The position numbers and the translations under genes were made by a program. DNA of 31,010 nucleotides from Octopus sinensis. Lineage: Eukaryota. The stretch is taken from contig NW_021833209.1 in NCBI RefSeq assembly GCF_006345805.1, positions 1 through 31,010 of the forward strand, read 5' to 3'. This document shows, piece after piece, positions 14,345 through 15,355 of this stretch. Numbering within the stretch: the stretch's first letter is position 1; every line of letters starts with the position of its first letter. The notes under the pieces are model-generated. The model saw nothing but the letters and a program-made list of their open reading frames with translations, did not search any database and was not told the DNA's origin.

Positions 14345-15355
14345 GTGATTCATTACACTTACCATTCTCTACATTCAAACACCTATACACTTACCATTCA
14401 AACACTTACCAACCCTACATTTACCATCCCCTACACTTACAATTCCCTACATTTACCACTACCTACTCTTAACATCCTTTACACTTACCATTCATTACAC
14501 TTACCATCCTCTACACTTAATACTTCTACACTTACCATTTCCACCACCTACACTTACCATTCCCATACTTACCCCCTTTACACTTACCATTTCCACCACC
14601 TACACTTACCATTCCCATACTTACCCCCTTTACACTTATCACTTTTACACTCAGTTCCTATACTTACTGTCCACTACACTTACCCCCTAACACTTACAAC
14701 CCCTTACACTTAACATTCCTTACACTTACAATTCCTACAATTACCATCCTCTACACTTAATACTTCTACATTTACCATCCTCTACACTTAATACTTCTAC
14801 ACTTACCATTCCCATACTTACCCCCTTTACACTTATCACTTTTACACTCAGTTCCTACACTAACTGTCCACTACACTTACCACCCCTTACACTTACAACC
14901 CCTTACACTTAACATTCCTTACACTTACAATTCCTACACTTACAACTCCTACACTTACTATTCCTACACTTACCCCCTATATTTCCTGTCCCTCTACACT
15001 TGCAATTCCTTCACTAATCATTCATTACTCTTACCATCCCTTACACTTACCATCCCCTAAATTTACTGTCCCCCTACACTTACAATTCCTTACACTTACC
15101 ATTTATTACACTTACTGTTCTTACCATCCCCTAAATTTACTGTACCCCCTACACTTACAATTCCTTACACTTACCATTTATTACACTTACTGTTCTTACC
15201 ATCCCCTAAATTTACTGTCCCCCTACACTTACAATTCCTTACACTTACCATTTATTACACTTACTGTTCTTACCATCCCCTAAATTTACTGTACCCCCTA
15301 CACTTACAATTCCTTACACTTACCATTTATTACACTTACTGTTCTGTACACTTAC
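14345..15355. repeat. ACACTTAC-core minisatellite (GTAAGTGT on the transcribed strand), ending in four 74/75-bp units
   Basis: Dozens of (A)CACTTAC cores. Units start at 15051, 15125, 15200 and 15274 and alternate 74/75 bp. Confidence 0.93.

What the first reader, a model, noticed from the sequence alone, without database searches (positions are those of the whole stretch)
14345..15355. 1-kb minisatellite built from the 5' splice-site consensus, starting exactly at the real donor
Seen: on the transcribed strand the intron begins TACG|GTAAGTGTACAGAACAGTAAGTGTAATAAATGGTAAGTGTAAGGAATTGTAAGTGTAGG. The GTAAGT hexamer is then repeated dozens of times. About 20 copies by eye are G|GTAAGT (many ATG|GTAAGT), as strong as the authentic site. 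The proximal part is a higher-order repeat (74/75/74/75 bp). Inference: the array seems to have grown by slippage seeded on the donor sequence. It forms a dense field of U1-binding decoys that could create extended-exon isoforms (mostly frameshifted or NMD targets), act as an intronic enhancer or U1 sink, or make DAT splicing depend on copy number.
Basis: partly seen in the sequence, partly recalled or inferred. Interest (0 to 1): 0.7.

Follow-up and report, generated by a model that had tools for sequence, protein, structure and literature searches.

The report
Intron minisatellite repeating the splice donor
A 1-kb tandem repeat at the start of one intron of a mollusc dopamine-transporter gene copies that intron's own splice-donor signal about 60 times; the repeat is real, but the same kind is already known in human and lancelet genes, where the extra donor copies were found to be mostly or wholly unused in splicing.

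Summary
On the minus strand, the intron after the exon ending ...SYCYG starts at 15355. From its first base to about 14348 it is an array of about 60 units of 15-16 bp (GTAAGTGTA plus an A/G-rich spacer). It holds 38 GTAAGT, 21 G|GTAAGT and 14 ATG|GTAAGT. Fourteen internal sites score at least as high as the real donor.

The gene is a DAT-type SLC6 transporter. The intron position is old and shared with gastropod, chiton, leech and nemertean relatives.

This is a known kind of repeat: a minisatellite that starts at an exon-intron boundary and repeats the donor. Examples are human F7 IVS7, IFI6/6-16, CBS, LMNB2 and PDGFA, and the lancelet "mirages". In those, the upstream site is used and the copies are mostly silent.

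Nothing here supports a selected decoy role:
- The donor-critical G+1 and G+5 are among the three most variable core positions.
- Every internal site gives a stop codon or a frameshift.

New finding: Lymnaea stagnalis DAT carries an unrelated donor-repeating array in the same intron, plus a second one in another intron. Biomphalaria has none.

Verdict: new member of a known kind, probably a neutral and unstable by-product of a repeat-rich genome. No RNA data were available.

The parts
15356..15455 (-). Exon 6 of a DAT-type SLC6 gene. It encodes [33 protein letters not shown] and the first base of the following Gly codon.
   Evidence: tblastn mapping and splice-site reading. It aligns without a gap across the junction to Drosophila DAT 6m2r residues 401-467, E 2.5e-28. 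Pfam SNF, E 6e-23.
15348..15358 (-). Authentic 5' splice site ACG|GTAAGTGT (positions -3 to +8). The intron is phase 1.
   Evidence: It is the only donor that joins ...YG to VDKF... in frame with all homologues. Rough PWM score 6.29 bits, 7 contiguous U1 pairs.
15340..15355 (-). Boundary (first) unit GTAAGTGTACAGAACA. Its sequence is unique in the array. It equals the last sub-unit of the higher-order repeat (GTAAG-AACA) plus a 7-nt TGTACAG.
15336..15338 (-). In-frame TAA at intron nt 18-20. Read-through gives ...YGKCTEQ*.
15041..15339 (-). Proximal higher-order repeat: four copies spaced 75/74/75, 94.7-100% identical (copies 1 and 3 identical). Each holds three GTAAGTGTA, one GTAAATTTA, one GGTAAGAACA and one AATAAA.
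14348..15355 (-). The whole array: about 60 units of 15-16 bp (GTAAGTGTA plus an A/G-rich spacer). The sense strand has G 366, A 350, T 278 and C 17.
14600..14974 (-). Distal 197-bp higher-order repeat (1.9 copies, 92% matches).
14527..14638 (-). A 52-bp duplication inside the array (2.2 copies, 100% identical), showing recent growth away from the donor as well.
13908..14347 (-). The rest of the intron. It is C/A-rich on the sense strand and includes a (CCA/CAC)-type array at 14163-14343, the polypyrimidine tract and the acceptor ...ttctttcag.
13807..13907 (-). Exon 7. It supplies the last two bases of the Gly codon, then [33 protein letters not shown].

Best explanation
This is a lineage-specific intronic minisatellite of the donor-repeating ('mirage') kind.

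Origin (inferred). A short tandem duplication began at an old, strong donor (G|GTAAGTGTA) of a dopamine-transporter-type gene. Slippage and unequal exchange then amplified it into about 60 units of 15-16 bp, and later into higher-order blocks of 52, 75/149 and 197 bp. Every unit therefore carries a copy of the 5' splice-site consensus. The near-identical proximal blocks show that the array is still turning over, so it is probably variable in length between individuals.

Effect on splicing (inferred from the human F7 and lancelet precedents and from the reading frame, not shown here). The spliceosome uses the first, exon-adjacent donor. The downstream copies are ignored, or used at a low level that yields stop-containing transcripts. 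The array itself has no selected function.
For: Anatomy:
- The array starts at the donor. TRF places its start 1 nt upstream of the donor G.
- The 9-mer GTAAGTGTA occurs 32 times in the array and nowhere else in the 31-kb window.
- The boundary unit is related to the last sub-unit of the higher-order repeat but has not been homogenised.
- Proximal copies are 94.7-100% identical, and a distal 52-bp duplication is 100% identical.

The donor is older than the array:
- The exon structure and the intron after ...YG are shared with Biomphalaria, Lymnaea, a chiton, a leech and a nemertean.
- The orthologous Biomphalaria intron is 96 nt with no repeat.

No sign of selection for donor competence:
- G+1, G+5 and G+7 are the most mutated core positions, at 10, 8 and 8 of 59 units.
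- All internal sites give a premature stop or a frameshift.

Permissive genome context:
- 41.7% of the window is tandem repeat.
- The neighbouring introns also start with arrays.

Independent parallel:
- Lymnaea DAT has two arrays whose units include the last 9-10 exon bases plus the donor, one of them in the same intron.

Precedent:
- F7 IVS7, 6-16, CBS, LMNB2 and PDGFA (PMC1557585).
- Lancelet mirages (PMC3087553, PMC3902484).
Against: - No transcript data were available, so use of only the first site is inferred from protein homology and from precedents in other phyla.
- The exonic share of the first monomer is at most 1-3 nt. The literature examples have 4 nt or more, so 'spans the boundary' is only just met.
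- The 9-nt core is much better conserved than the spacer. That could mean constraint on the core. It could also come from how I picked units (2 mismatches or fewer) and from the higher-order structure.
- Two mollusc classes carry such arrays in the same intron.
- Arrays start next to donors more often than uniform placement predicts: 7 observed against 1.6 expected. Something more than neutral accident may be at work.
- F7 pseudo-sites are weak (gugggu), while these are near-consensus. In F7, pseudo-sites raised to a perfect consensus did attract splicing.
Confidence: 0.8

Rival explanations
1. The array is a selected splicing or processing regulator. On this view the 20-odd strong U1-binding sites do one or more of three things: recruit U1 to reinforce the exon-adjacent donor, channel part of the transcripts into stop-containing isoforms to tune transporter dosage, or keep the AAUAAA signals inside the array silent.
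For: - 22 internal sites have at least 7 contiguous U1 base pairs and 14 score at or above the real donor.
- The GTAAGTGTA core is kept while the spacers vary.
- Four AATAAA lie in the proximal blocks, the first one 5 nt after the in-frame stop.
- Lymnaea has an independent donor-repeating array in the same intron.
- Arrays start near donors more often than expected.
Against: - The positions U1 and the spliceosome need most (G+1, G+5) are among the three most variable of the core.
- Biomphalaria does without any array in this intron.
- The octopus-type and Lymnaea units share nothing beyond GTAAGT.
- Sharing one intron out of about 8 by chance has odds of roughly 1 in 6 to 1 in 8, given that Lymnaea has two such arrays.
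- In the tested human case the pseudo-sites are silent, and no autonomous regulatory element was found in the neighbouring intron.
- The four AATAAA are one motif amplified with its block.
Confidence: 0.1
2. The array is a copy of a dispersed satellite family, or an older intronic minisatellite, that ended up against the exon. This could have happened through deletion of the unique sequence in between, with the first repeat now serving as the donor. On this view it was not seeded from the donor.
For: - Other arrays in these genes start 3-19 nt after donors without repeating the GT. These are window introns 5 and 7, Biomphalaria intron 5 and Lymnaea intron 2. Arrays can therefore come to abut donors in other ways.
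- 16-bp-periodic GTAAGTGTA arrays exist in 24 unrelated metagenome contigs.
- The exonic share of the unit is minimal.
Against: - There is no other GTAAGTGTA in the 31-kb window, even though 41.7% of it is tandem repeat.
- The metagenome arrays have unrelated spacers and only 3-16 copies. At least two follow long bacterial or phage-type reading frames, so they are not one family.
- The donor position is ancient.
- The boundary unit is related to the last sub-unit of the higher-order repeat.
Confidence: 0.08
3. The G/U-rich array and the C/A-rich remainder of the intron act together as a bridging RNA structure. It would bring the donor and acceptor together and bury the pseudo-donors. I recall similar (GT)n/(AC)n introns reported in teleost fish, but did not check that paper.
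For: - The minimum-energy fold of the whole intron pairs the two halves, at -334 kcal/mol with 322 inter-half pairs.
- The GC skew flips from about -0.9 to +0.8 on the plus strand at the boundary between the two halves.
Against: - Shuffling the C/A-rich half gives the same energy gain (-247.5 +/- 9.4 against -243.3 kcal/mol). The pairing is therefore a matter of base composition only.
- The C/A-rich part is 440 nt against 1008 nt of array, so most pseudo-sites could not be covered.
- The As in the array, 35% of its bases, would find few U partners.
- I saw no such two-part composition in the Lymnaea intron (by eye; not measured).
Confidence: 0.04

Closest known systems
Human F7 intron 7 VNTR (37-bp minisatellite; Borensztajn et al. 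2006, PMC1557585)
   Same: It is a tandem array at the very start of an intron, so the authentic donor is followed by copies of itself. The copies are competent in principle. Only the most upstream one is used, by a 5'-to-3' scanning-type choice. The array is polymorphic in length.
   Different: - F7 has 5-9 units of 37 bp with 4 exonic nt and a weak donor (UGG/gugggu).
- Here there are about 60 units of 15-16 bp, at most 1-3 exonic nt, and a near-consensus donor (G|GUAAGU).
- Splicing behaviour and polymorphism were not tested here.
Human IFI6 (6-16) intron 2 minisatellite, and the CBS IVS13, LMNB2 and PDGFA intron 4 minisatellites (as summarised in PMC1557585)
   Same: Each has a first monomer spanning an exon-intron boundary, with the donor repeated many times (25 pseudo-sites in 6-16). 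[quoted passage not shown]
   Different: According to my memory of the original 6-16 report, which I did not check, proximal pseudo-site use there adds in-frame amino acids. Here the first alternative (+16) shifts the frame and all the others include a stop.
Lancelet 'mirages': minisatellite-like tandem duplications of exon-intron boundaries in Adh3, TnC, globin and PGBD5 genes (PMC3087553, PMC3902484)
   Same: They are tandem repeats starting at splice junctions in an invertebrate with a repeat-rich genome. Units are 10-160 bp, many carrying GT/AG signals. Length is unstable, copies evolve in concert and the boundary copies are excluded from homogenisation. Normal splicing is not disturbed.
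   Different: - Mirage units usually contain a clear piece of exon, whereas here almost none is included.
- The two Lymnaea arrays found here (L026 2110-2741 and 29189-29575) fit the mirage definition better than the window's array does.
Intronic pseudo-5' splice sites acting as U1 decoys or silencers, such as the Drosophila P-element somatic inhibitor region (from my own knowledge, not checked here)
   Same: These are 5'ss-like sequences that can bind U1 without being spliced.
   Different: Those are single or paired sites, conserved and bound with partner proteins. Here there is a degenerating tandem array with no conservation of the critical positions.

Membership tests
Donor-repeating ('mirage' / F7-IVS7-type) intronic minisatellite | Tandem array that begins at, or overlaps, an exon-intron boundary | tested here: met
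   The first unit starts at intron base 1 (15355). TRF places the start of the 16-bp array 1 nt upstream of the donor G.
Donor-repeating ('mirage' / F7-IVS7-type) intronic minisatellite | The repeat unit contains the authentic donor sequence, so pseudo-donors recur in the intron | tested here: met
   32 exact GTAAGTGTA, 21 GGTAAGT, and 14 internal sites scoring at or above the real donor.
Donor-repeating ('mirage' / F7-IVS7-type) intronic minisatellite | The first monomer includes exonic nucleotides | tested here: inconclusive
   Only the exon's last G (ACG against the commonest ATG) is shared with the units. The rest of the exon end (TTATTGTTAC) does not resemble the spacers. In Lymnaea 9-10 exon bases are clearly included.
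Donor-repeating ('mirage' / F7-IVS7-type) intronic minisatellite | The donor or intron predates the array (the array is a secondary, lineage-specific growth) | tested here: met
   The same intron position occurs in gastropods, a chiton, a leech and a nemertean. The Biomphalaria intron is 96 nt without a repeat.
Donor-repeating ('mirage' / F7-IVS7-type) intronic minisatellite | Copy-number polymorphism or instability | not testable with these tools
   Only one haplotype is available. Blocks that are 98.7-100% identical argue for recent turnover.
Donor-repeating ('mirage' / F7-IVS7-type) intronic minisatellite | Splicing uses the most upstream site, and pseudo-sites are silent or minor | not testable with these tools
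   No transcript data. Only the first site keeps the reading frame that all homologues share.
Selected U1-decoy or splicing-regulatory element | Preferential conservation of the positions needed for U1 pairing and catalysis (G+1, U+2, G+5) | tested here: not met
   G+1 is mutated in 10 of 59 units and G+5 in 8, as often as or more often than the non-critical G+7 (8). U+2 is conserved (1 change), but so are A+4 and U+8.
Selected U1-decoy or splicing-regulatory element | Measurable effect on splice-site choice or mRNA level | not testable with these tools
   Needs RNA data or minigenes.
Dispersed satellite family | Copies of the same unit at other, unrelated loci of the same genome | tested here: inconclusive
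   None elsewhere in the 31-kb window. The source genome and all cephalopod sequences were absent from the searchable collections. The metagenome matches have unrelated spacers.
Intron-bridging complementary repeats (teleost GT/AC type) | Complementarity between the 5' and 3' parts of the intron beyond what base composition gives | tested here: not met
   The energy gain with the native tail is -243.3 kcal/mol, against -247.5 +/- 9.4 with shuffled tails.

The most novel reading that the evidence does not exclude
Donor-adjacent arrays in mollusc neural genes may not be accidents. On this reading, the same DAT intron independently gained a donor-repeating array in a cephalopod-type genome and in Lymnaea because a run of U1-binding sites just downstream of this donor is favoured. 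It could be favoured as a length-variable control of productive against stop-containing splicing, or of premature polyadenylation, that sets transporter dosage.
Probability: 0.06. Interest if true: 0.75.

Novelty: new member of a known kind. Interest (0 to 1): 0.35.

Why it matters
With about 20 near-consensus G|GTAAGT sites within 1 kb of the real donor, this is one of the most extreme natural examples of repeated 5' splice sites I could find. The 6-16 gene has 25 pseudo-sites, and F7 has 4-8 weak ones.

If neural transcripts use only the first site, that would extend the 'most upstream site wins' rule from mammalian cells to molluscs. It would also extend it to pseudo-sites as strong as the real one, which is a harder test than F7.

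The practical lesson concerns gene annotation. In repeat-rich mollusc genomes, gene predictors and splice-aware aligners can pick the wrong donor in such arrays. The Lymnaea DAT gene has two of them, so exon ends next to tandem repeats need checking against homologues.

There is no evidence that the array matters for dopamine-transporter biology.

Tried and rejected
1. Looking up the window's own reading frames across exon 6 and across the array in the public contig index: not on record.
2. Searching for cephalopod orthologues to compare the intron. The protein database returned no cephalopod sequence, and the best match is 74% (gastropods), so the sister-species test was impossible. For that reason I ran no further search on the array's repeat peptide.
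3. Metagenome scan for three GTAAGTGTA at 16-bp spacing. It gave 24 contigs of short arrays (3-16 copies) with unrelated spacers. Some look like triple donors of short introns (L011, L019, L020). Others follow long bacterial or phage-type reading frames (L009, L013).
4. hnRNP A1-type UAGGG(A/U) motifs as silencers of the pseudo-sites: not enriched, 2 against 2.9 expected. GGGG runs are only mildly enriched, 26 against 17 +/- 5.
5. Long-range pairing of the array with the C/A-rich tail: explained by composition alone. A first attempt with dinucleotide shuffles timed out.
6. Recursive-splicing sites: by eye, the array has no pyrimidine tract plus AG|GT junction, and its sense strand has only 17 C.
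7. Look-ups of Littorina and Nucella SLC6 loci: not on record.

Full report

Yes. Between 15355 and 14345 the minus strand holds 38 GTAAGT, 21 GGTAAGT, 14 ATGGTAAGT and 32 GTAAGTGTA. The rest of the window has no GTAAGTGTA on either strand. Shuffles that keep base composition give 1.2 +/- 1.1 GTAAGT. A three-unit pattern has 5 matches against none in 100 shuffles. TRF reports a 16-bp period of about 46 to 65 copies depending on the run, and higher-order periods of 52, 75/149 and 197 bp.

**Gene context**

- The two flanking exons translate to GGAYVV...SYCYG and VDKFSDD...VFLM. Joined, they align without a gap to Drosophila DAT (6m2r, E 2.5e-28). Human NET comes next, then human DAT. They also match Pfam SNF.
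- Eight exons of the gene lie on the minus strand of the window.
- A 325-residue concatenate of these exons is 74% identical to the DATs of Biomphalaria pfeifferi and Lymnaea stagnalis.
- No cephalopod protein appeared in the database, so 'octopus' could not be checked. A mollusc origin fits.
- Exact limits: exon 6 is 15455-15356, the intron is 15355-13908 and exon 7 is 13907-13807. The intron is phase 1.
- The intron position after ...YG is old. Unrelated animal SLC6 fragments end their exon there. The position also recurs in both gastropod DAT genes, a chiton SERT-like gene, a leech gene and a nemertean gene.

**Anatomy of the array**

- Segmenting on the 9-nt core gives 59 units of mostly 15-16 bp.
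- The first unit (GTAAGTGTACAGAACA) is unique.
- Four higher-order copies follow, spaced 75/74/75 and 94.7-100% identical. Copies 1 and 3 are identical.
- The last sub-unit of each copy, G|GTAAG-AACA, is the exon G plus the first unit minus 7 nt. The real donor therefore sits in a partial 'copy zero' of the block.
- Further in, the units are more degenerate, but this part contains a 197-bp repeat (92% matches) and a 52-bp duplication (100% identical).
- The sense strand has G 366, A 350, T 278 and C 17. The plus-strand GC skew is -0.75 to -1.0 across the array, and flips to +0.6 to +0.8 in the C/A-rich remainder of the intron.

**Strength and consequences of the pseudo-sites**

These are rough substitutes for MaxEntScan.

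- The real donor scores 6.29 bits with 7 contiguous pairs.
- Fourteen internal sites score at least as high, 21 score at least 5 bits and 22 have at least 7 contiguous pairs.
- No site scoring 3 bits or more lies in the rest of the intron.
- Reading on from the exon gives YGKCTEQ*, with the stop at intron nt 18-20. Every internal site beyond +16 therefore includes a stop, and the +16 site shifts the frame.

**Is there selection for donor competence?**

There is no sign of it. Among the nine core positions, mismatches fall on G+1 (10 units), G+5 (8) and G+7 (8). Positions +2, +4, +6 and +8 hardly vary. This looks like decay at G positions, and the spliceosome's two most important Gs are not protected. 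One caveat applies: I picked units by allowing 2 mismatches or fewer to the core, which inflates conservation equally at all nine positions.

**Surroundings**

- 41.7% of the window is tandem repeat.
- The upstream 245-nt intron is mostly (GTT)n and (ATATTCTC)n.
- The downstream intron starts ATG|GTAAGTCATCGTCATC..., which opens a 2-kb CAT-rich array.
- The whole-intron fold pairs the array with the C/A-rich tail, but shuffled tails do equally well. hnRNP A1-type motifs are not enriched.

**Related sequences**

- The orthologous Biomphalaria intron is 96 nt and has no repeat.
- The orthologous Lymnaea intron (L026 29189-29827) starts TGGGCCTATG|GTAAGTCCAGCTG.... It continues as 12.5 copies of a 28-bp unit (56-bp higher-order repeat, 94% matches). 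That unit repeats about 10 exon-like bases plus GTAAGT or GTAAAT.
- A second Lymnaea array lies after the exon ending ...YLCYKNGGG. It has a 43-bp unit, ACGGTGGAG|GTAAGGATC..., in about 15 copies.
- The Lymnaea units share nothing with the window's unit beyond the donor consensus, so these are independent events.
- Across about 67 donors in eight SLC6 loci, only these three have repeated donors.
- Given two such arrays in Lymnaea, sharing an intron with the window's array has a chance of roughly 1 in 6 to 1 in 8.
- Arrays of any kind start within -15 to +40 nt of donors 7 times against 1.6 expected in the three mollusc DAT loci (Poisson P about 0.001). This is a rough test made after seeing the data.

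**What is known**

Borensztajn et al. (PMC1557585) describe the same construction in human F7 intron 7. They list 6-16, CBS, LMNB2 and PDGFA as further cases. [quoted passage not shown] Only pseudo-sites raised to a perfect consensus drew some splicing. In lancelets, such repeats at exon-intron boundaries are called 'mirages'. They are unstable in length, evolve in concert except at the array edges, and do not disturb splicing (PMC3087553, PMC3902484).

**Mechanism**

Shown:
- The array begins at an ancient donor and repeats it.
- It has amplified recently.
- Its pseudo-sites are strong on paper but decaying at critical positions.
- Any use of the pseudo-sites would be unproductive.

Inferred:
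- A short duplication began at the donor, possibly through slippage between the donor and a nearby GTAAGT-like sequence. Unequal exchange then expanded it.
- The first site is chosen because it is the first one met downstream of the exon.
- The array is tolerated rather than useful.

Rivals and my probabilities: a selected U1-based regulator (0.1), a dispersed satellite that came to abut the exon (0.08), and a bridging RNA structure (0.04).

**Verdict**

The origin idea is supported. The functional ideas are unsupported. This is a new member of a known kind, notable for the number and strength of its pseudo-sites and for the parallel case in Lymnaea. Interest is 0.35. The main limits are that no transcript data, no second haplotype and no related cephalopod genome were within reach.

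Noticed in passing
L026 29189-29575 and L026 2110-2741 (Lymnaea stagnalis DAT locus, GCA_964033795.1): There are two textbook donor-repeating arrays. One has a 28-bp unit (56-bp higher-order repeat) and sits in the intron orthologous to the window's intron 6. The other has a 43-bp unit that includes the last 9 exon bases after ...YLCYKNGGG. Biomphalaria has neither.
   Followed up: yes
window donors at 15700, 15355, 13806; L025 18662; L026 2119, 17452, 29189: Tandem arrays start within -15 to +40 nt of splice donors 7 times against 1.6 expected from uniform placement in three mollusc DAT loci (P about 0.001; a rough test made after seeing the data). Deletion of unique sequence up to the constrained donor could explain this, or the start of introns may be prone to duplication.
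   Followed up: partly
window 11738-13806 (minus strand): The next intron starts ATG|GTAAGTCATCGTCATC... and is a 2-kb CAT-rich array with periods of 27, 48 and 75. Read through from exon 7, it stays open for 609 codons (a His/Cys- then Ser/Leu-rich tail), so intron retention would not meet a stop for 1.8 kb.
   Followed up: partly
window 15456-15700 (minus strand): The 245-nt intron upstream of exon 6 has a weak donor (CAG|GTACAG, 0.6 bits in my rough score). It consists mostly of (GTT)n and (ATATTCTC)n arrays.
   Followed up: no
window 15331, 15256, 15182, 15107 (minus strand): There is an AATAAA in each proximal block. The first lies 5 nt after the in-frame stop and is followed by GU-rich sequence. 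On paper this is a composite terminal exon that would give a truncated transporter ending ...YGKCTEQ. It is one motif amplified four times.
   Followed up: no
window 13908-15355: The strand composition inside this one intron flips sharply. The 5' 1 kb is G/A/T-rich with 1.7% C on the sense strand. The 3' 440 nt is C/A-rich. Predicted pairing between the two halves is explained by composition alone.
   Followed up: yes
window 3307-5690 and 5694-8079: A 2.4-kb head-to-tail duplication, 94.8% identical, carries matching (AT)n, (AAT)n and (AC)n tracts.
   Followed up: partly
window 20434-20807 and 22795-23155: Two dimers of a 184-bp element lie in opposite orientation, 88-90% complementary and about 2 kb apart, inside the intron between the exons at about 23.7 kb and about 20.1 kb. 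In the pre-mRNA they could form a long hairpin.
   Followed up: partly
window 8411-9760 and 1681-2458: There are tandem arrays of a 167-bp unit (8 copies, 93% matches) and a 309-bp unit (2.6 copies). Related sequence recurs elsewhere in the window, which suggests a short interspersed element family that also forms arrays.
   Followed up: no
L011 773-813 (metagenome contig ERZ1740065 NODE-51614, reverse strand): A 90-codon open frame ends at ...TTTACAG and is followed by three exact GTAAGTGTA(C/T)GCCG... units. A TTTTAG acceptor-like site follows about 75 nt on. This may be a triple donor in a short intron of an unidentified eukaryote.
   Followed up: no
databases: No cephalopod protein or contig turned up for a well-conserved neural gene.
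   Followed up: partly
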